Assembly (NCBI GenBank): GCA_052426225.1
Contig: JBNJNM010000011.1
Coordinates: 4,030,001-4,094,000 of the forward strand
Reading direction: 5' to 3'
Length of the DNA stretch: 64,000 nucleotides
From: Zancudomyces culisetae HAW-14-8
Lineage: Eukaryota > Fungi > Kickxellomycota
The translations under genes and the position numbers were made by a program. Shown here in pieces: positions 7,982-21,100 of this stretch (position 1 is its first letter; every line of letters starts with the position of its first letter). Under the pieces are notes generated by a model that searched no databases, was not told the DNA's origin, and worked only from the letters and a program-made list of their open reading frames with translations.

Positions 7982-9322
7982 CTATAAAAAGCTGAAAGTT
8001 GGGCCTTTTGTTTTAAAGCTATCACTAAGATACTCCTCATTAAGGTTGTTTTGCATTTTTCTTGCACGGAGCAGGAATGTTGAGTCCATTTGAGGCTCGT
8101 TACTAAGAACCTCGTAGAGATTAATGACCTGGTCAATGTCAGTCAGCCTATTATCAGGTACCGCAGGCGTAAAATCACAGTTGTCGTCTAAATCTGCAAA
8201 TATGCGTTCCTTTTTCCAAAAACATAAACGCTTGGCTACGTTTCCAAATGAAAATCCGATGGACCACTTTACCTCGCGGAATGCTGCCTGGATGGCCGGG
8301 TCAAAAATAAATACGAAAACATAAATAAGGCCCGAATAAGCATAAAACATGTATGAGCTGCGCAATGTCTTAAGAGAATCTTCACTTTGATCCACACCCA
8401 TGATGGCCTTATTTATTCTGATGGCATTATATAGTGAAATGACTGTATATATCGTAAGTGCAATGGCGTACAGTGATATTCGTAATACACCTGTATAAAT
8501 TTTTCTGGCTGAGCTGCTATAGTAGAAGACTCTATCCCTTGGTCTGAAAAATCTAGCGACTCTTGATTGAGCAAGTCTATTCTTAAATCCGCCCACTCTT
8601 GAGTTGTTGCATTCGCTCCTAAGATTGTAGTAATCATCGCTACCATCACTACCATCACTCCCTCCTCCATTCTTTGCAAGTAGGTATATGTTTTTTTCTT
8701 CAAGCTTTCTTGAGTTTTCTTGACTAATTCGACTAAACTGTGAGTCAATTTTGCCTTTTTCGCTAATAATCTTGTAGCACACTAAAATAAATACTCCCAG
8801 GCTGTATATTCCCGGAATTATTATCCAGACATATGTTACAAAGAATTGTGTCAACATCAGTTCACCAAAACTAGTGTAGTCTCTAGTATCCGCCCAGCAG
8901 ATTCCAGCGCCTATTGAATAAAACAACTCACCAATTATTATGACAAATGCCAACCCAACGCTACCCATGACATATGTTGTAAATGACCATCTGCTATAGT
9001 AGCTTCGTTTTCGTAGAAATACAATATGGAGGTTGATTGCTATACACGTTAGTAGGTATGTGGAGAAGAGTGTTGTAAAATTCAAAAGAGGTAGTACTAC
9101 TCTGCAAGATACCGGGCTATTGTCAAACAGTGTGCTGGCTATTATCCGCAACAATGCATTTAAGGTGTTGGACAGGGCCATTAGCGTAACCAGTTTAAGC
9201 GATACTCTATCGACAATGTACCTTTTGTATATCCAAAACATCATAAAGAAAATAACAGCCAAGAATGAAAAACACATGGTTAGCCAAAGCCCAGCCTTCA
9301 TACCAGAATCAAAGCTACTCAT
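7982..9322 (-). CDS. Seven-transmembrane GPCR-like receptor (cAMP-receptor/Git3-like class)
   Basis: About seven hydrophobic segments, DRVSL after TM1, Cys before TM3 and CW in extracellular loop 2, long third intracellular loop, DP in TM7. Intronless; first ATG at 9322. Confidence 0.7.
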   Translation of the reverse strand: MSSFDSGMKAGLWLTMCFSFLAVIFFMMFWIYKRYIVDRVSLKLVTLMALSNTLNALLRIIASTLFDNSPVSCRVVLPLLNFTTLFSTYLLTCIAINLHIVFLRKRSYYSRWSFTTYVMGSVGLAFVIIIGELFYSIGAGICWADTRDYTSFGELMLTQFFVTYVWIIIPGIYSLGVFILVCYKIISEKGKIDSQFSRISQENSRKLEEKNIYLLAKNGGGSDGSDGSDDYYNLRSECNNSRVGGFKNRLAQSRVARFFRPRDRVFYYSSSARKIYTGVLRISLYAIALTIYTVISLYNAIRINKAIMGVDQSEDSLKTLRSSYMFYAYSGLIYVFVFIFDPAIQAAFREVKWSIGFSFGNVAKRLCFWKKERIFADLDDNCDFTPAVPDNRLTDIDQVINLYEVLSNEPQMDSTFLLRARKMQNNLNEEYLSDSFKTKGPTFSFL

Positions 9323-10729
9323 CTTTCCCTTTTTTTGGATTATTTTTTCTTTTGATTTGCAAAATAAAGTGTTATTAGTATTGGAGTGTTTATTGATCAA
9401 TGCTGCTTGCCTGTTATCAATATGTGAGTATAGGCTTCAATGTGTAATATCAAAAAAATGTTTTTGCTATTTGTTGGTTGAAAAAGTTTAAAGAAAAAGG
9501 TAAAAGCACAACAGGATGAAAACAGCATTTATATACTATTTGGGATTTTTAGTAAAGATTGATAACCGAGATGCCACTTTAATATTTATCCTTGTATTAG
9601 AGCTAAGATGAACGCTGAAAACGAACTCCTACCCATGTTTCATTTATTATTGTTGTTATTGTTATTGCATCGGCTTGATGTCTATTGATGTTGGCTATAA
9701 AATGTAATTGCTCGATTATTGAGGTTTACGAATAAATTGATTGTGAATAGGTTTGATGTGCTATTGATGTTATAAGGAGTGGGTTGAGAAAACCAAACAT
9801 ATGCAAGTTTTAGAAATCAATTTTTTGAGATCTGTAATGAGCAGGAGACGTCTAGATGGGTGAACGTATGGATCTACTTGCCTTGTTATTTAGGGAGGTG
9901 AGGGGGTGGTTAGAAAGTAAAGATATTTTAAACGAAGAAATTTTCACCAAAAAAATCCAGAATGGCCATGAATACTACTTTTTTTCTTGAAGATTAGCTT
10001 GAATTTGTGCCTATTTGAAACCACAATAGGCAAAACCGAATCTAACAAGAAAACATATATTGATATCTTTGTCACTGAACCCTGAAAAGGGTATACTAAA
10101 TCTATACATACACCCCACACTGTGTACTAGCAGTATACATCAGTATTCTTATCAATTGCACCACCAAACTGTTGTTTCACAATAGTTTTTCAATAACATT
10201 TCTAAAGAACTGATTGTCTATTGAGGAGTTTATTCATCAGTGAAAGCTCAATAATTAATAAGAGTTAATAGCTATTTTGGGTCAAATGTAAAATAAAGAT
10301 ATGATGTTGTGTCCAAAATAGGAAACATGGCAGGAAAAGGGTTCAGTTGGTCTGCTCTATGTTGGTATCTGCGTAGCACACACAAGAGACAAAATAGTGC
10401 AAAAATCGCAGTGTGAAACAAAGATGAAGTAGGGTCAGAGAAAATTAATGGTATATTGGTGCTTTTTTCTTTTAACAAAGGATTACAGATTGGGTATTTG
10501 ATAATCCTCAAGTATTTAGAAATGTGATTTTTTTTTAAATAAAACTCAAGAAATTATACCATCTCTAAACATCATCAAGTATTGATTTAAAATATATCCA
10601 CTACACGTTACAGTAGTACGACCACTCTGTTTATGGCACCGGGTTCAGACAATTAATAATACATTTTTTTTGTGTGACGGTAGTCACTTGAAAAAAGAAA
10701 ATAAGCTAGAATAGTACTAATGACGCCAA

Positions 10730-12335
10730 TTATTCACATAGGCTGTTGAACTGGCGCTCCCACTCTGCACTTAGCTCACTGGACATAGCTACCATTTTTG
10801 CATGCTCCTCATTCACACCATCAATAAAAGATAGACCAAGGCAGGATATCGACTTGATTTTCTTTTCCGAACAGGAAGAGACTATTCGTGCAAGCTGCTT
10901 CCGCGTATGGGAATAAATTACTGGAACATTTTGGGCTTTGCATTTCTCTAATAAAGAGGTCAGGTCTGCAGGGAACTCTCTTTTAGCATAATCAGTTGGT
11001 TGGATATTAACACTAACAATCACGCTGTGTATCTTTTTGCTATAATTTGTAGGAGCTAGACCCTTCTCGCTCAGCTTGACCTTTCTGCATACCTCCCTTA
11101 ATCCGGTATAGTACCTTTGTTTATACCCACTGCCCCCATTCTTGCTATTTCTGCTCTGGTACGTGGTCAGCTTTTCTATTATGCCTAAGACTATCTGTTG
11201 GAGCTCAGGCGTTATTAGCTGCGTGACATAGCTATTGTTAAGATACCCATTTGCATTAAGATTGTATTTGTAGCATGTTAATGAAATATTAAAAAAAATA
11301 CAATAGATACCTTTGGATTTCTGCCTCATTAGTAAACATAGCTTGGCTTTTTATCTTTTGAATTTGTTTGCAGACTTTTATACCGTTTTTGAAATGCTTT
11401 CTGCCATCATGCTTTTCATCAGCAGCAAATTTTATCAATTCTTGAACCTGGCTTTTCATTTTTAGCACCTCTGTACTTTCTTTTAGCGAATCCTTAAACT
11501 TTTCAATCTTTGCCTTTCGCATATCCTTTCTCATCTTGTACTCGTCTTTTGTGCCTACTTTACCATTAATATCTTGGACCCCCAAAGTACTATTTTTGCA
11601 AGATTGATGTTGAGGTACCTCTGTAGCCCTATCTGCCTCTTCCACATTGTTCGTGCTAATATTCGCGTCTGCCTGATCATTGCCATGCTTTATCTCATGA
11701 ATGATATGTTTTTGAACAAGATACTTTTTTTTTAACTTTGAAATTTTCGTTGTCTTTGGCAATCGCCTTTGTATACCTCTATATAGCTTGCTAGGTGCAG
11801 TTTTATCCAAAATATTATTCTCTCCGTATTTTACCTCGTTTTTATCTACTTTTGTCTTTCCTTGTAGTAAAAGCCTGTCCTTTTTATCGGGCAGGAGTGT
11901 TTTTTTGCGTATTTTTCTTTTAGTAACGGATATTTTTATCTGTCTTTTCTTCTTGGATGTTTCTTGACTGTGACTTTTTAGTATTACCTTGTTTCTGGAA
12001 TTCGGGCTATCTATCAACACATGCTGTCTTGTTCTATGTCTCGTGATGGGTTTAATATTGGAAGCTTTATTCAGGTCTACTCGTTGATCACCCTCCCTTT
12101 CATTTCTGGTGAAACAAGAGTCTGTTTTACAAACGTATTTTCCGGACGGCTTTACCCAAACTTCTGTGATTTTGGTTTGCCGATCACTTCCAACCTTTTC
12201 TAGTGCTTCTTCGATAACTTGAGATAGATTGAATCCTGATTGTGGTTTCGGCTTGGTCTTTTTTTTGGTCTTGACGCCAGTTGCGGTGCTACCAGATGCC
12301 TTCGAGCTTCGATTTGTAGCTTGATTATACTGCAT
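10730..12335 (-). CDS. SBP2: SECIS-binding protein 2 (selenocysteine insertion factor); exons 12335-11311 and 11231-10730, about 508 aa
   Basis: SID-like motif NILDKTAP..RGIQRRLPKTTKISKLKK, then YVTQLIT.EL...V..IIEKLTTYQSR, then an L7Ae domain (RYYTGLREV..KVKL, VIVSVN, QNVPVIYSHTRKQLAR, SCLGLSFIDG...HAKMV). A 79-nt GT..AG intron (11310-11232) joins the two ORFs in frame. Confidence 0.88.
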
Positions 12336-12727
12336 AACTCTAATATATCTTAATAGCTGTAAAATCTTCGAAAGTAACCTATGCAGAAGAGCGCAGTTTT
12401 GAAACAAAATCTATATTGCGTCTAAGGCATGCTTTTGATCATAAGCAAATATAAAGCTTGTAAAATACGTGATTCAAGCTTTGCGACTATTTCTTTTGTA
12501 TTTTATTCGCTAGCCCGAAAGGTCCAATAAAAATGTCAGTATTTTTGGTTGGCATTTATTAGCTCAGCCGTTTCGCGATTGGTGGGCAGAGTTTCAGAGT
12601 TGCATATTTCACTAAACTGAAACACAATTTGTCTCATGTATTGTATCTTTTGTTGTTTACATACTCTTATATTGAACGATTTGGAATAGTAACATTTTGT
12701 TATAAAGAGGGTTTAGACCGAAGAAAC

Positions 12728-14088
12728 ATGCAGAAGATAGTAGAGAAATTGAAAATTAATCTAGGTCTGGCGACCAATAGATTGAAATTGCTGAGAGAAA
12801 AGAAAAAGGCAATAGGAAAAGCAGAAAGAAAAGAAATATCGAGATTGCTAGAGCAAGACGAAACAATGGTGGCAAAGATAAGAGTAGGGATATTTCCAGC
12901 TTAAAGCATTATTTTATCTTTGTGATGGTAACCTTTAAATAAGAAAAATTCGGTATACAATGTGAGAATCCTAAAATAATTCGCGAATAGGTCGAAAAGA
13001 TAATCCAAGAGGACTATATAATTGAGGCCCTTGAGCTTTTGGAACAATACTGCAGAAGGCTGCAAAATAGATTGATACTTATTGATCAAAGCAAACAGCT
13101 AGACGATTCGACAATGGAGGTCATTTGTAGTATAATATATTCTTCAGGGAGGGTAAATGTCAAGGAATTTGCTACGGTAAGTATTGTTTTTTATGTTTTT
13201 TAAATACCAGTGAGAACGTATGCCCATTTTTTAAAGGATCCGTTAAACACTATTAAGAATGAATCTACAAAGAATTTAAATCATACTTTTCAGCGTTTCC
13301 TGGACACATGAGTAATCCACCCCAAAAAAAAGAAACACTGCTAACAGCTTAACATTGATACTCTAGATTAAAGACATATTTACAAGTCTATATGGACGAG
13401 AGTTTGTAGGGCATAGTCTAGACAATACGAATCTTAAGGCAAACGAACAGGTAACCTAGAAAATTTTGTAGTAGAGTTGAGCAATAAACAGTAAACAGCG
13501 AATGCTGTGGTCACACAGTGCTCGTATTGAATTAATTAACAAGTGATAAAAAAAATATTAGCTTGTAGCCAAACTCAATATCTGCGAATTTGATCCGTTG
13601 CTGATCAAAGAATATTTACGAGAAATAAGTCGTAGCTATGGAATAAAATGGGTACCATCAGATGAGGAACCGGAGGACGAATCGAGTGAGGATGATGATG
13701 GAAATGGCGGAGGAGCAAAGGAATCCGAAGCAAAGGTAACGTACCAAGGTGCATCTAAGAAATTTATCATGATGCACAGGTGTTGTTGATATAGTAACAA
13801 CAAAATAAGTATGCATATTTTTAGGAAGAGGAAAAAGAACGGGAAAAGGAAGTCGAAGCCAGACACAGCAAAGTAAATGTACCACAACAGAAAGTCAGAA
13901 AAAATGAGAATGATAACAGTGTGGATAAAGAATCCAGTACTAGAGATAGAGCCGATAATAGTAGTCACAGCAGTAACAAGGCACAAACTGGAGACGAAAA
14001 AAAGGTGTCAGATTCCGCTGGAAGCGCCAACCAGGTGCCGACAATGGATGAATTGATGAAGAGATTAGAAGCGCTAAAAAGAAACTGA
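12728..14088 (+). CDS. IST1: ESCRT-III-associated Ist1; exons 12728-12883, 12991-13176, 13367-13450, 13562-13735, 13825-14088
   Basis: KLKINLGLATNRLKLL, AKIR|VEKIIQED...LELLEQYC, YGREF, YLREISRSY and C-terminal MIM1 DELMKRLEALKR. All exons join in phase 0. Confidence 0.9.
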
Positions 14089-14251
14089 TGCTAGTTCAGA
14101 TAGATGTACATGTTTTGGCTAGAACATGAAAAACACCCAACTATTATTATTATTGTTATTATTATCATTATTATTGTGTGAGAGTGACGAGGCTGTCAAT
14201 AAAACAATACATGTTATAAAAGCGCTATGTGATTACAGGATACTAATGCTC

Positions 14252-15184
<933 letters not shown>

Positions 15185-15956
15185 TTATAGTTTGGACAAA
15201 GATCCCCAAGCTTTTTTTTTTGTGCTTGTGAAATTCTGCTTTGGTTATTTTTCTATTTGTGGAAACTAGAGATGCTAATTTAGATATGAGCAATCAAACC
15301 ACATATTTTTCTGTTAATGTATTTTTTTTTTTTGGTGGGGGGAGGGGTAAGAAATAATTATAAAAGGATAAAACAGGGACTAACTGGGTTAGTAGTGATA
15401 TTCAAAGAAACAAATGAAAGAATTGTTGTCTGATCTTGCAGAGAAAATACCAGTTTTTTTTATTTCGACGCATATATATAACCTACATACCGGAAAGGGT
15501 ATATATCATATAATAATGAGAAAAGACAAACTATTTAGTGAATATCAAGATTTGTTTGCCAATTCATTTTTGTAGAAAACATTTCTATGGCCAAAATGGC
15601 AACATGGGCGACATTAAATTAGTTTAAAAAGTGGCAAACGAAAACTGCACATTTTTTGAAATTCAGCAATAATGGCCAAGGCTGTTTATTGGGTTGAAAC
15701 AACAGCTACTAAAATAAAATAACAGCACTAAAAAAACAATAAAACACTAATGCTCTGCTAGAGTATTTTACAATTATTCATCTAGTTCCAGTCAAGTAAT
15801 TTTGCTATCGTTGTTCAATTTGAACTAAAAACTGAGGGTCAAAAGAGAAACAATTGAGAGAAAAAGCAATAAAAAGTAGTAAAGAAATCCAATCAAGAAT
15901 TAAATCAAAAAAACACAAGACGGGATTGAGCAAATAAAAACATATAAAAGACAAAA

Positions 15957-17346
15957 ATGTCAAGATTACCACCAGTAGTTATAGATAATGGAACAGGGTA
16001 AGAGAGTCTATAGATGCATCATATTGATATAATCTTTAGCAATAAAAAAAAATCAAATAACTGATAAACGACTGTTGAATAGGTATACAAAAATGGGATT
16101 TGCGGGAAACACCGATCCGCAATTTGTAATACCCTCAGTTATCGGCCTCCCAAACAAGAATATCAAGCAAACAAGTCGATATGGAATAGCTTCAAAGAGA
16201 GGAGTAGAGGATTTGGATTTTTATATAGGGGATGAGGCATTTGCTAATGGTCAAATGTATGGAGTTTCGTATCCTATGCGACAAGGGCAGATTGAAAACT
16301 GGGACCATATGGAGCGGATTTGGGAGACTAGTATATTTAAATACATGCGCTGTGAGCCGGAAAATCATTATTTTGTACTCACTGAACCACCACTGAATGC
16401 ACCAGAGAATCGGGAGCAGATGGCCGAAATATTTTTTGAGAGTTTCAATGTGAATGGGCTTTATATAGCAGTACAGGCTGTACTTGCGTTGGTAGCTAGC
16501 TGGACGAGCAAAAATAGTAATCAAAGTCTGACCGGGCTGGTTGTCGACAGTGGAGATGGAGTAACACATATTATTCCAGTGGCAGAAGGATATGTTCTGG
16601 GGGGAAGTTTGAAGAGCATGCCGATTGCCGGACGGGATATCACGAGTTTTGTGATGCAGCAGCTGAGAGATCGCAACGAACCAATTCCACCAGAACAAAT
16701 GATGGAGACAGCCAAGACCATCAAGGAGCAGTATGGGTACACATGCCATGATATTGTGAAGGAGTTCGAGAAGTACGATTTAGAACCAAGCAAAAACATT
16801 ATCCGACACATGCTGAAGGACAATCGTGGAACCATAGATGTTGGATACGAGCGGTTTTTGGGTCCCGAAGTCTTTTTCAACCCCGAAATAATTAGCACAG
16901 ATTACCTTACCCCACTACCAACCCTGATTGACCAAGCAATCCAATCAGCACCCATAGATACTCGCCGTGGCTTGTACTCCAACATTGTGCTAAGTGGTGG
17001 GTCAACAATGTTCAGCAACCTTGGTAAGCGACTACAGCGTGATTTGCGCAAAATTGTTGACGATCGCCAGAGCAGCAACCAGGCGCAACTGATGGCTGCG
17101 CGACTCAAAAATCCACTACAGCAACAGACTGGGGGTGGAGATAGTGGTGCATTTACAATTACAGCAAACCCAGTCGCAGTAAACGTGATTAGCCACAAGA
17201 AGCAGAGACATGCGGTATGGTTTGGAGGAAGTATTTTGGGCAGCACAGATCAGCAGTTCTACCAGGTTGCACATAGCAAGGCTGATTATGAAGAGTATGG
17301 GCCAAGTATATGTAGATATAATAAAGTATTTACCAGTCTCGGCTAA
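15957..17346 (+). CDS. ARP3: Actin-related protein 3; intron 15998-16082
   Basis: [14 protein letters not shown]|[56 protein letters not shown]. Confidence 0.97.
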
Positions 17347-17410
17347 CAGGTTTATTATTATTGCATTTCAGTATTTTATTTACGTTTTATTAATAAAAAA
17401 TTGCGTTAAA

Positions 17411-18049
17411 AATATGTCTAGCGTCTTGTGGTATGTTCACCAAAATGCACTGAAAGAGGAACATGGTATACTTTTATCAAAGGTGCTATAGTAGAAACCT
17501 AAACAAATTATAGGAGACTACATGATAAGTAGAACAAAGGTGTGGTTGGTTGAGAAAGGTGAACAGTTAACTGGTCAACAAATATACCACTGTGGTTGAG
17601 TTTGTTGCACCTAGTTATGAGTTACTAGCAACTAAAGTGAGTTGTTCAAATTGTTTAGTTAGCTCGATTTTCTAGGTTTAACAGAATTTATCTAGTGTTA
17701 ACCAGTACAAGGTTCAGGCTAGTAGCTAGCATTTTGGGTGTGCTCACAATTTCAGCTTGATAGATACCATTTCACTAAACTGTTGACCATGATGTTTTAG
17801 AGTAATTAGTAGGCTTAGGATAGTGGACATGATTAATGGCTATAGAGTTAGTTATTGTTGGTGTTGGTGTTGGTGTTGGTGTTGGTGTTAGTGTTGGTGT
17901 TGGTGTCAGCGTCAGTGTCAGAGCTAATTTGATGAGATGACAAAAAATAGGTGAATCAATATTAGTTGAGAGTTGAGAGGATGTTATAGTGTTTATTTGA
18001 CTTGCTAATATCAGAATTGGTCTGATTTTTATTTTAGTTGTTGTTTTAA
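17411..18049 (-). repeat. Dispersed ~0.65 kb repeat, copy A
   Basis: Long near-identity with 49976-50604 and, as reverse complement, with 32718-33117 and 63365-64000. Internal (GGTGTT)n tract. Confidence 0.95.
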
Positions 18050-18198
18050 TCATATTGTGGAAAAAAAAGAATGAAAAAGGATGAGAATATATTGGGAACC
18101 GATCCTGTAAATTGACGAAACACCAAGCTTGAAAACAAAGCCGAAAAAACTACAATAAAAAAAAGTAAAAGTAAATAAAAAAAGCTACCAATGTAGTG

Positions 18199-21100
18199 CT
18201 ATATTATTGAATCGATATTTAAATCCATTTCGTTTTCTATATCCAAAAACAAGCGTTCATGGTCAGAATATTCATCAATAACAGTGTGGTTGCTACTACT
18301 GGTTGAATCAACATGGTTATTGGCTTGACTAGTAGAGGGTACATCGTGTTCTTGATTGTAAAAATCGTCGTCATTAGCTAGATCGCAAGAGAGCAATGTA
18401 TCAGGTTCATTATCAGGTTCATTATCATTAATATCAGCGCCAGAACTAGGCGGATCGCTGGTCATGTTGTTTGAAAAATAGTTGTGATTACCATCGCCAT
18501 TGATGTTGGCATATAGTTTTGACATTGCAAACCGGTGGATATTATTATCTGCAGTATCGTTGGTAGCACCCAAGGAGGTATCAACATACCACCCATGTAA
18601 CTTACAATAATCAATAATGGATTTCCAAAGTGGACAACAGGCGAGGAGGAATGACTCGTTGCCCAATATAATACAGTGTGATTTTGATCGAGATAGTGCT
18701 ACATTTATGCGGTTTGGGTTGTTTAAAAACGTATTTATTCGAAGTTTAGGAGAATGAGATGAGCCTTGTCCTCGTGTGGTAATAGTTGTTGGTGCTGGCA
18801 GAGATTTGACGCAGTTGAAGAGAATAATATCCTTCTCGCTACCCTGAAATGCATCCACTGTACTTGTGGTGATTACAGAATCTTCAGCCACATCATCATT
18901 TTCATCATCATTATCAACGCCGTTATTCGGAGCTGAGTTCACGTGCCGGAAGAGATGAGGAAATGATGGTAGATGTTTTGAAAGCAGTTTGACTTGGTCT
19001 TTATAAAAACTAATTATCCCGATTGAATGGGTTTTGGATTGCCGACTAAAATTAGTATGTATAGATTTCAGGAGCTTTAAAGTCAATAGAAGCTCACTTT
19101 TGTTCATACAGCTAGTAGTATTTTTGGTTGGATTTGGGACTGAAGCGGTTGAGGAAGTTGGAGAAACAACGTTGAAAAAACAGATTGGTGGTAGGCTGGT
19201 AATTAGAGCAGGTCTTTCAGCCTCTGAAACCCCATTTATCAGCTGTTTGTTATAAAACAACGTATTCACAACCTCTGCAATCTTTGGATGGCAGCGATAC
19301 TGCGAACGCAACCTGATAATTGGCTCATGCTGTAATTTTATAAGCCGTTCAAAGAGTGTGTAGATAAATGGAATCCCAGACTCTGCATAGTACCGGTTGG
19401 TGACAATGCTGGCCATTGTAGGAGGCAGCTGTTTATGATCGCCAACCATTACCAGCACAGGTGGATTGAATTTCAACACCGGCACTGCCAACAGATGTTC
19501 TGTAATTTGACTAGCCTCATCTACCAACACAACGGGATACTTGGCGTCATTGCCCATGTTCATGCACATAATTGTAGTTGCACCTACTAAAAACTTGTTG
19601 TTGATATCTGCATTGCTAGCTGCCATCAAATAGGTGCGGATACTGCTACTAACGCGCGGCCGGCTACCCACTCGTGCTAGATCGTCAAACCCAAGTTCTA
19701 CTATTTTTTGCAAAACATTATCAACGGCACAGTTAGACATCGACGTCACCAGCATCCTCAGTCCACCATATGTCGGATGCTTCCCAAATATTTCTACAAA
19801 CTCTTGCTTTAGCGCTGCTGATACCACAACTATGACTGCAGTCACCAGTGACTTGCCTGTTCCAAATGGTCCATGGACTACTATTGCCTGTCCTTCTCCC
19901 TCTCGTCTGCATCCATTTTTATTCTTATTCTCGTTCTTATTCTTATTCTCGTTTTCTTCGATCTCAGCTTCATCTCTAGAACTGTTTGTATACAGCTTGA
20001 TTATATTGTCTATCACCTGCGTGACCACTTGCAACTGCTCTTGATTCAACTTATACAGTTGCTGTTGTTGTCCAATCAGTTCTTTTGCCCTTTTTTGTAT
20101 CCCGTTTCTCACTTCATCCTCAGTCTCTGCCATTATTTCCTTTGTTCCTTCCTTATCTGCCTTCCCTATCAAAACTTTTCCCAAATAAATGTCGTTCTCA
20201 CTGTCTTTTTCTACTTCCTCCAACATTTCCAAAATACTCCATTCATTCACACTTTCCACCATCCGTAAACAATACATCTCTATCTCCCTCTCCAATTCTC
20301 TATCCTTTTTCTGTAACATCTGTCTCTGATTTTTTTCCAAGCCAGCTCCGAATATCTTTTTTAGCTTGTCCTTATTATCATCATCTACCCCATCTATCAT
20401 TATTGTACCATCACTGTTTACTCCATAATATTCACTTTTGCATACTATTCCGTTGTGGAAATCTACCGTTTGTGAAATGATCCATGTATCGTTTTTTTGA
20501 TATTCTTCACTTTTCTTTTTTGCTCCCTTTTGTCCATATTTGTAAAAATTTCTGTTTGCACCGCCATTACCATTATTACCAGTAACTCCCGATATTCGGT
20601 ATCCGTTCATCCCCCTAACCAAACCGATTCCTTCATAATACTCTATCTTTTGGGTCTTCAATTTACTAGCCATCATCTTTTGATTGATATACTTTTTTTT
20701 GGTCTCATAAAACATCTTTGCTGTCTCTGCTATTGTATCTTGTATAAACTCTCGCAGCATTCCCTTAATTGTTCTACAATAGTCTCCCCAGTTCTCCTAT
20801 TTAATGCATTCATCCACCCATTTATTTATTATTTTTGACCCCTTGGTTAATCAATACATCCTACTCTGCCATTTACAAATCGATACTTACATAATCTAAC
20901 CTCAGCCTTACTCCCCCACTACCCCTCTTCTTGTAGTATTCCATCTCGATTTCTCGTTTATTTGGAAAACTTATTTTATTCACTTTTGTCCTACAGTAAA
21001 GACATTTCCATTCATAAATTTTGTTATCTTCAATATCGCTTACTTTATTCACAATATTTATATTATTTACCTTACACCATTAATCGTGACCTTGTTGTTA

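What the first reader, a model, noticed from the sequence alone, without database searches (positions are those of the whole stretch)
10730..12335. Intact SBP2 gene: this fungus probably decodes UGA as selenocysteine
Seen: two ORFs join through a 79-nt intron into about 508 aa, carrying in order the Lys-rich SID motif, a YxxQ...LxxYQxR segment (vertebrate RFQDR region) and an SBP2-type L7Ae domain. Known: SBP2 binds SECIS elements and works with eEFSec; most fungi lost Sec, and it is reported only in a few early-diverging lineages, including Harpellales. Inference: the genome should also encode tRNA-Sec, eEFSec, PSTK, SecS, SPS and selenoproteins that gene callers truncate at TGA. The ORF track splits this gene, so automated annotation could miss it.
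Basis: partly seen in the sequence, partly recalled or inferred. Interest (0 to 1): 0.85.

Follow-up and report, generated by a model that had tools for sequence, protein, structure and literature searches.

The report
Known fungal SBP2, ankyrin tail lost
This is the real, intact gene for the protein that lets the mosquito-gut fungus Zancudomyces culisetae read some UGA stop codons as selenocysteine, a trait already published for this species; the new details are a missing ankyrin tail and unusually stretched recoding signals in its target mRNAs.

Summary
Confirmed. Window 12335-10730 (minus) is a two-exon, 508-codon, single-copy SBP2 gene: K-rich SID, RFQDR-like helix, and an L7Ae domain whose best sequence and fold match is human SECISBP2. 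The intron position is shared with Smittium. The genome is Zancudomyces culisetae and holds tRNA-Sec, SepSecS, eEFSec, PSTK, SPS with an in-frame TGA and SelenoH with an in-frame TGA. All of this is published (Mariotti 2018 preprint/2019; G3 2025), so the headline is already known; the scan had also noted the other machinery genes on other DNA of this genome. Side results I found in no held paper: (1) five fungal SBP2s from four phyla carry C-terminal ankyrin repeats, and this gene lacks them; (2) Harpellales SPS 3'UTRs hold a SECIS core whose halves lie 74-269 nt apart, against 44-58 in other fungi, closed by a separately supported outer helix in three of five species, which would explain why standard searches miss it; (3) four more fungi have TGA-bearing SPS genes. 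The final 2019 paper was unavailable and may already describe. No RNA run was listed; the joined protein was not searched.

The parts
11311..12335 (-). SBP2 exon 1 (ATG at 12335; 341 codons + 2 nt), mostly Lys-rich and low in conservation
   Evidence: tblastn with Smittium SBP2 covers 11870-11304
11709..11816 (-). K-rich SID (residues 174-209); human IILKE is replaced by KYLVQ and the R540 position by K
11313..11372 (-). Segment just before the intron conserved with Smittium SBP2 (C..QIQKI.S..F..E.E.Q), at the place of the animal IHSRRF/FRDY block
   Evidence: positional equivalence inferred
11232..11310 (-). 79-nt GT-AG phase-2 intron, same position in two Smittium species
10730..11231 (-). 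SBP2 exon 2 (RNA-binding domain, ends at TAA)
11150..11164 (-). TYQSR, equivalent of human RFQDR 654-658
   Evidence: alignment to 7zjw_B, A1
10781..11116 (-). L7Ae core with the invariant Gly (residue 385 = human G676) and an 11-residue insertion after the RNA-binding helix
9401..10729 (-). Non-coding stretch where other fungal SBP2 genes continue into ankyrin repeats; no trace of them here

Best explanation
The gene encodes the single SECIS-binding protein 2 of Zancudomyces culisetae. Shown here: gene structure, domains, family, single copy, and the presence of all partner genes and of two selenoprotein genes (SPS, SelenoH) with TGA at the Sec position. Inferred from animal SBP2: the L7Ae domain binds the kink-turn (tandem G-A) core of a 3'UTR SECIS, the K-rich SID contacts SECIS and ribosome, and the complex lets eEFSec deliver Sec-tRNA(UCA) to the in-frame UGA. 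Inferred from comparison here (less sure, about 0.6): its SPS target keeps a normal core and both helices but has an enlarged apical part (74 nt between core halves). The protein works without the C-terminal ankyrin repeats that other fungal SBP2s carry, so those are dispensable or accessory.
For: Only PDB sequence hit of exon 2 is human SECISBP2; the profile of its homologues scores SBP2 200 bits against 46 for L7Ae; the predicted fold matches SBP2 in the SECIS-80S structure best, TM 0.79, E 1e-8. Named homologues are SBP2. Tree: with Smittium 100/98, all seven fungal rows on one side of a branch 88/91 (113). Single copy. Partner genes; Sec TGA in SPS (49) conserved in eight other fungi; SelenoH TGA. 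Species identity: 98% SPS protein and 98.3% DNA identity to Z. culisetae COL-18-3, contig sizes matching the HiFi assembly. Published: 10.1101/314781, PMC12611240.
Against: The domain is divergent: below the Pfam cut-off, P-x-K-A-K motif before the L7Ae core lost, 11-residue insertion, IILKE replaced. No Rfam SECIS in either target. No reads for the junction. No biochemical test of any fungal SBP2 was found in the held papers. The tree had no non-SBP2 outgroup.
Confidence: 0.93

Rival explanations
1. It is a true SBP2, but recoding in this fungus no longer uses a SECIS-type core. The signal is another element (for example the conserved TGKGAAACCT motif in the SPS 3'UTR, or a structure next to the UGA), and the enlarged SECIS candidates are chance folds.
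For: No Rfam SECIS. The SPS candidate is not more stable than shuffles (z +0.46); the SelenoH candidate has p 0.3 and a U in place of the purine; S. megazygosporum has no outer helix. The TGKGAAACCT motif is conserved after the SPS stop in five Harpellales (0 of 1000 shuffles) and is not explained by the SECIS model. The pattern was defined after looking at the data.
Against: The same core pair is the top-scoring pairing in all nine fungal SPS UTRs; the pattern occurs in 24 of 570 background windows and 0 of 17 window genes but in 5 of 5 Harpellales SPS UTRs; the outer helix is the best or nearly best partner in S. simulii, Furculomyces and G000 with unrelated sequences; the first two pairs of helix 2 show double-sided changes in G000 and Endogone.
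Confidence: 0.3
2. It is an SBP2-derived protein that has lost its Sec role and the Sec system of this fungus is decaying.
For: Loss of the ankyrin tail, divergence of SID and L7Ae flanks; only two selenoproteins found; a related species is reported to have lost the trait (from memory: Smittium mucronatum).
Against: Frame intact, invariant G, Q, R, R, E kept; all partners present; TGA codons identical in two strains and across Harpellales; transcripts of the machinery reported.
Confidence: 0.04
3. It is another L7Ae-family protein (Snu13, Nhp2, eL30, eL8, Gadd45, Rpp38) and the upstream exon is unrelated.
For: Pfam gives only the general L7Ae family; the language-model search returns unnamed L7Ae clusters at scores below 0.9.
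Against: SBP2 is far ahead in sequence, profile and fold searches; SID present; intron shared with Smittium SBP2; other L7Ae genes exist elsewhere in the genome with scores of 25-31 bits against 162.
Confidence: 0.01

Closest known systems
Z. culisetae / Harpellales Sec machinery (Mariotti et al., bioRxiv 10.1101/314781 and Nat Microbiol 2019; G3 2025, PMC12611240)
   Same: Same species, same gene set (tRNA-Sec, eEFSec, PSTK, SBP2, SPS, SecS) and same two selenoproteins; the preprint already notes divergent fungal SBP2 and missing SECIS.
   Different: Those texts, as far as held, do not describe the ankyrin fusion or its loss, nor a SECIS with a long insertion; the 2025 genome-level Selenoprofiles list lacks SBP2. 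The final 2019 text could not be read.
Human SECISBP2 (PDB 7zjw/7zjx)
   Same: SID, RFQDR helix, L7Ae with invariant Gly; same fold (TM 0.79).
   Different: 508 against 854 aa; about one third identity in the domain; IILKE replaced, PxKAK lost, 11-residue insertion, no C-terminal tail.
Fungal SBP2-ankyrin proteins (Smittium simulii PVU95764, S. megazygosporum PVV00852, Gonapodya KAJ3338991, Paraphysoderma KAI9143475, Bifiguratus OZJ04102)
   Same: Closest relatives; shared intron with Smittium; same clade.
   Different: All five continue into several hundred residues with ankyrin repeats; this gene stops right after the last L7Ae helix, as most non-fungal hits do.

Membership tests
SBP2 (SECISBP2 family) | L7Ae-type RNA-binding domain closest to SBP2 | tested here: met
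SBP2 (SECISBP2 family) | Invariant Gly of the L7Ae motif (human G676; PMC2746813) | tested here: met
   G43 of exon 2, invariant in 26 rows
SBP2 (SECISBP2 family) | RFQDR-type helix N-terminal to the L7Ae core, absent from other L7Ae proteins | tested here: met
   TYQSR, Q and R conserved; helix 8-30 in the model
SBP2 (SECISBP2 family) | K-rich SID upstream (consensus in PMC2673426) | tested here: met
   14.4 bits, above all 2000 shuffles; IILKE part diverged
SBP2 (SECISBP2 family) | Co-occurrence with tRNA-Sec, eEFSec, SepSecS, PSTK, SPS and UGA selenoprotein genes | tested here: met
SBP2 (SECISBP2 family) | Binds SECIS and ribosome and supports Sec insertion | not testable with these tools
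   needs binding and translation assays
SBP2 (SECISBP2 family) | Spliced, expressed transcript | tested here: inconclusive
   no RNA run listed; two SBP2 predictions in the published transcriptome of what is probably this strain
Fungal SBP2-ankyrin subtype | C-terminal ankyrin repeats after L7Ae | tested here: not met
   present in five relatives; not found here
Eukaryotic SECIS (Rfam RF00031) in target mRNAs | Canonical-length SECIS reaching the family score | tested here: not met
   the one weak genome hit lies inside an acetyl-CoA carboxylase-like coding frame
Eukaryotic SECIS (Rfam RF00031) in target mRNAs | RUGAN/KGAW core flanked by helix 1 and helix 2, any apical length | tested here: inconclusive
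   met in form for SPS, weak for SelenoH (p 0.3); function untested
Snu13/Nhp2/eL30/eL8/Gadd45 | Best match among L7Ae proteins, no SID | tested here: not met

The most novel reading that the evidence does not exclude
The 'missing' SECIS of Harpellales selenoprotein mRNAs is an ordinary kink-turn core and two helices whose apical loop has grown from about 45-60 nt in other fungi to 74 nt in Z. culisetae and 120-270 nt in Smittium and Furculomyces. Fungal SBP2 ancestrally carries an ankyrin-repeat tail that Z. culisetae has lost, and the Sec trait reaches more fungi than the nine published (Synchytrium microbalum, Polychytrium, Endogone, Quaeritorhiza, perhaps Paraphysoderma), and none of this is already in the 2019 paper.
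Probability: 0.35. Interest if true: 0.6.

Novelty: already known. Interest (0 to 1): 0.33.

Why it matters
The headline adds nothing to the literature: Sec use and SBP2 in Z. culisetae are published. The value lies in the by-products. They give an exact gene model that a genome-level selenoprotein pipeline missed. They give a concrete, mutable candidate for the fungal recoding signal, which the discoverers left open. And they show a natural ankyrin-less fungal SBP2 of 508 aa from a culturable species, a compact part for testing fungal Sec machinery in yeast, an experiment proposed in 10.1101/314781 and PMC10573291.

Tried and rejected
Word-index homologue search with exon 2 found nothing; the full HMMER library did. 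Exon 1 alone gave no PDB or useful Pfam hit. SelenoH was missed by PF10262 and TIGR02174 and found by a codon pattern; its pieces hit no family model, so its name rests on the CxxU motif, the C-terminal motif as I know it from animal SelenoH, and the published list. Rfam SECIS searches failed; the single weak hit is inside a coding frame. A further exon after 10730 through the GTGAAT near the stop was rejected: no homology or ankyrin trace in 9401-10729. Fission of the ankyrin tail into a separate gene was not supported: nothing with the Smittium tail, only generic ankyrin proteins with the five-row profile, nothing next to the DEAD helicase that neighbours SBP2 in Smittium; the genome has many ankyrin genes, so a very diverged separate copy is not excluded. 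3'UTR introns as the cause of the long SECIS insertions were not consistent across species. A circularly permuted SECIS built on the TGKGAAACCT motif gave no consistent pairing. No RNA run was listed. The final Nat Microbiol paper and one review were not held; one search fetched an unrelated paper through a wrong id; one script crashed.

Full report
Observation. The minus strand has an ATG at 12335 and an open frame to 11311, a GT-AG intron of 79 nt (11310-11232) and a second exon to TAA at 10730; 1527 coding bases give 508 residues. The intron is 23% GC against 37% and 43% for the exons. The SBP2 genes of Smittium simulii and S. megazygosporum have a phase-2 intron at the same codon, which is independent support for the junction. 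No RNA run was listed for this stretch, so the junction is not shown by reads.

Family. Exon 2 hits only human SECISBP2 in the PDB (E 7e-4). In the full HMMER library it finds 32 proteins; those with names are SBP2 or hypothetical proteins of Sec-using eukaryotes, and one is a chance PAS protein. A profile of 26 of these scores human SBP2 at 200 bits and the best archaeal L7Ae at 46. The AlphaFold model (pLDDT 87.5) matches SBP2 in the SECIS-programmed 80S structure first (TM 0.79, E 1e-8). The Gly equal to human G676, and the Q and R of the RFQDR motif, are kept (definitions in PMC2746813). Exon 1 holds the K-rich SID at residues 174-209: it aligns to vertebrate SID and beats 2000 shuffles with a non-fungal SID profile (14.4 against at most 10.1 bits). 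Differences: KYLVQ for IILKE (the pentapeptide that sets SECIS form preference in PMC2673426), loss of the PxKAK motif, and an 11-residue insertion. In a tree of the domain the protein joins the two Smittium rows (100/98) and all seven fungal rows lie on one side of a branch (88/91); there was no outgroup. It is the only SBP2 in the genome.

The genome. G000 has a tRNA-Sec over the Rfam cut-off with UCA anticodon at C12:2376020 (9-bp acceptor and 4-bp T stem by inspection), SepSecS at C14:532619-534278, eEFSec at C6 near 500800, a PSTK-like 440-residue frame at C21 near 3237800 (weak: E 2e-8), and SPS at C21 with TGA in K-G-U-G-C-K at 463453. SelenoH lies at C11:3954420, 76 kb from the window, with TGA in C-T-R-U. 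The species is Zancudomyces culisetae: SPS is 98% identical to the COL-18-3 protein, the SelenoH locus 98.3% identical over 3.5 kb, and contigs of 5.24 and 2.52 Mb match the largest contig and N50 of the HiFi assembly of strain HAW-14-8.

What is known. The 2018 preprint names Z. culisetae as a Sec-using fungus with SBP2, SPS and SelenoH, and notes divergent SBP2 and missing SECIS elements. The 2025 genome paper adds SecS and reports expression of the machinery.

Mechanism. Shown: gene, domains, partners, target TGA codons. Inferred from animal SBP2: L7Ae binds the tandem G-A core of a 3'UTR SECIS, SID contacts SECIS and ribosome, and eEFSec then delivers Sec-tRNA to the UGA.

Side result 1, ankyrin tail. 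The five full-length fungal homologues (two Smittium, Gonapodya, Paraphysoderma, Bifiguratus; four phyla) all continue into ankyrin repeats; none of the 12 other SBP2 hits scanned does. The tails align from a shared P-I/V-W-x-A motif right after the last L7Ae helix. This gene ends at that helix. A profile of the tails finds nothing downstream, nothing specific in the genome, and nothing beside the DEAD helicase that flanks SBP2 in Smittium and lies 720 kb away here. The simplest reading is an ancestral fungal fusion lost in the Zancudomyces line, perhaps when the gene moved. Two paper searches for SBP2 with ankyrin found nothing.

Side result 2, the recoding signal. Rfam finds no SECIS after SPS or SelenoH. 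Allowing up to 300 nt between the two halves of the core, the best pairing in each of nine fungal SPS 3'UTRs is RUGAN...KGAN with helix 2 starting G-C, C-G in seven, G-C, A-U in G000 and A-U, C-G in Endogone. The inner length is 44-58 nt in Synchytrium, Polychytrium, Endogone and Quaeritorhiza (p 0.005 or less for three of them), 74 nt in G000 (core halves at C21:461932 and 461853), and 121-269 nt in Smittium and Furculomyces. As a separate check, the 28 nt before the 5' half pair better with the 28 nt after the 3' half than with any other window in S. simulii and Furculomyces, and better than 97% in G000; S. culicis is neutral and S. megazygosporum fails. An AATAAA follows the 3' half within 4-42 nt in four of five Harpellales. 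The pattern occurs in 24 of 570 background windows and 0 of 17 window genes. Against it: the pattern was set after seeing the data, the G000 element is the local minimum-energy fold but no more stable than shuffles (z +0.46), and the SelenoH candidate (C11:3954785-3954853, 60 nt inner, U for R) has p 0.3. I put the SPS element at about 0.6. First-stage readers of this scan noted both G000 hairpins on their own (seen after my tests). A second motif, TGKGAAACCT, 60-240 nt after the SPS stop in five Harpellales (0 of 1000 shuffles; not enriched genome-wide), remains unexplained. I recall that the abstract of the final 2019 paper mentions 'other RNA structures'; I could not read it, so these may be known.

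Side result 3. SPS genes of Synchytrium microbalum, Polychytrium aggregatum, Endogone sp. FLAS-F59071 and Quaeritorhiza haematococci have TGA at the Sec position, and Paraphysoderma (Blastocladiomycota) has an SBP2. Reviews of 2023 still count nine Sec fungi. I did not check the rest of their machinery or contamination.

Verdict. Observation confirmed, interpretation supported, system already known. Interest 0.33, carried by the testable SECIS candidate and the ankyrin architecture rather than by the gene itself.

Noticed in passing
L009:1243-1252 minus (G000 C21:462002-462011); L055, L056, L059, L060 3'UTRs: Conserved 10-nt motif TGKGAAACCT after the SPS stop in five Harpellales, upstream of the SECIS candidate; 0 of 1000 shuffles; no structure or role found.
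   Followed up: partly
L009:1094-1173 minus (G000 C21:461853-461932); L055, L056, L059, L060: SECIS-like core with 74-269 nt between its halves in Harpellales SPS 3'UTRs.
   Followed up: yes
L039:950-1769 (G000 C11:3953949-3954768): SelenoH gene with a long low-complexity N-terminus, TGA at C11:3954438, an 82-nt intron, and a weak SECIS-like hairpin starting 15 nt after the stop; annotated in NCBI as a 163-aa hypothetical protein ending at the TGA.
   Followed up: yes
L009 near 2860 minus (G000 C21 near 463620): The SPS frame has a TAG just before its first conserved residues; the start is probably an ATG followed at once by an intron. This may be why the published run lists SPS as 'unaligned'.
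   Followed up: partly
L078, L079, L080, L081: SPS with in-frame TGA and clear or probable SECIS in Synchytrium microbalum, Polychytrium aggregatum, Endogone sp. and Quaeritorhiza haematococci, none named in the held 2018 preprint; Rfam scored none of these SECIS.
   Followed up: partly
P0004: SBP2 with ankyrin repeats in Paraphysoderma sedebokerense (Blastocladiomycota), a phylum not listed among Sec users in the held papers.
   Followed up: no
P0011: Bifiguratus SBP2 model is joined at its N-terminus to an EFR3 domain, probably a gene-calling merge.
   Followed up: no
G000, many contigs: At least 160 ankyrin-repeat matches, many in open frames of about 1050-1250 residues: a large expanded family in this genome.
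   Followed up: no
window 7982-9400 minus: Neighbouring gene with several hydrophobic, membrane-like segments, GPCR-like by eye, no Pfam hit; a similar frame lies 4 kb from the DEAD helicase (L082:7913-9220).
   Followed up: no
window 12629-20760: Ordinary neighbours: Ist1, acyl-protein thioesterase-like hydrolase, actin-family protein, UPF1-like helicase; no Sec genes nearby, and the Smittium neighbourhood (Rad10, DEAD helicase, amino acid permease) is not kept.
   Followed up: partly
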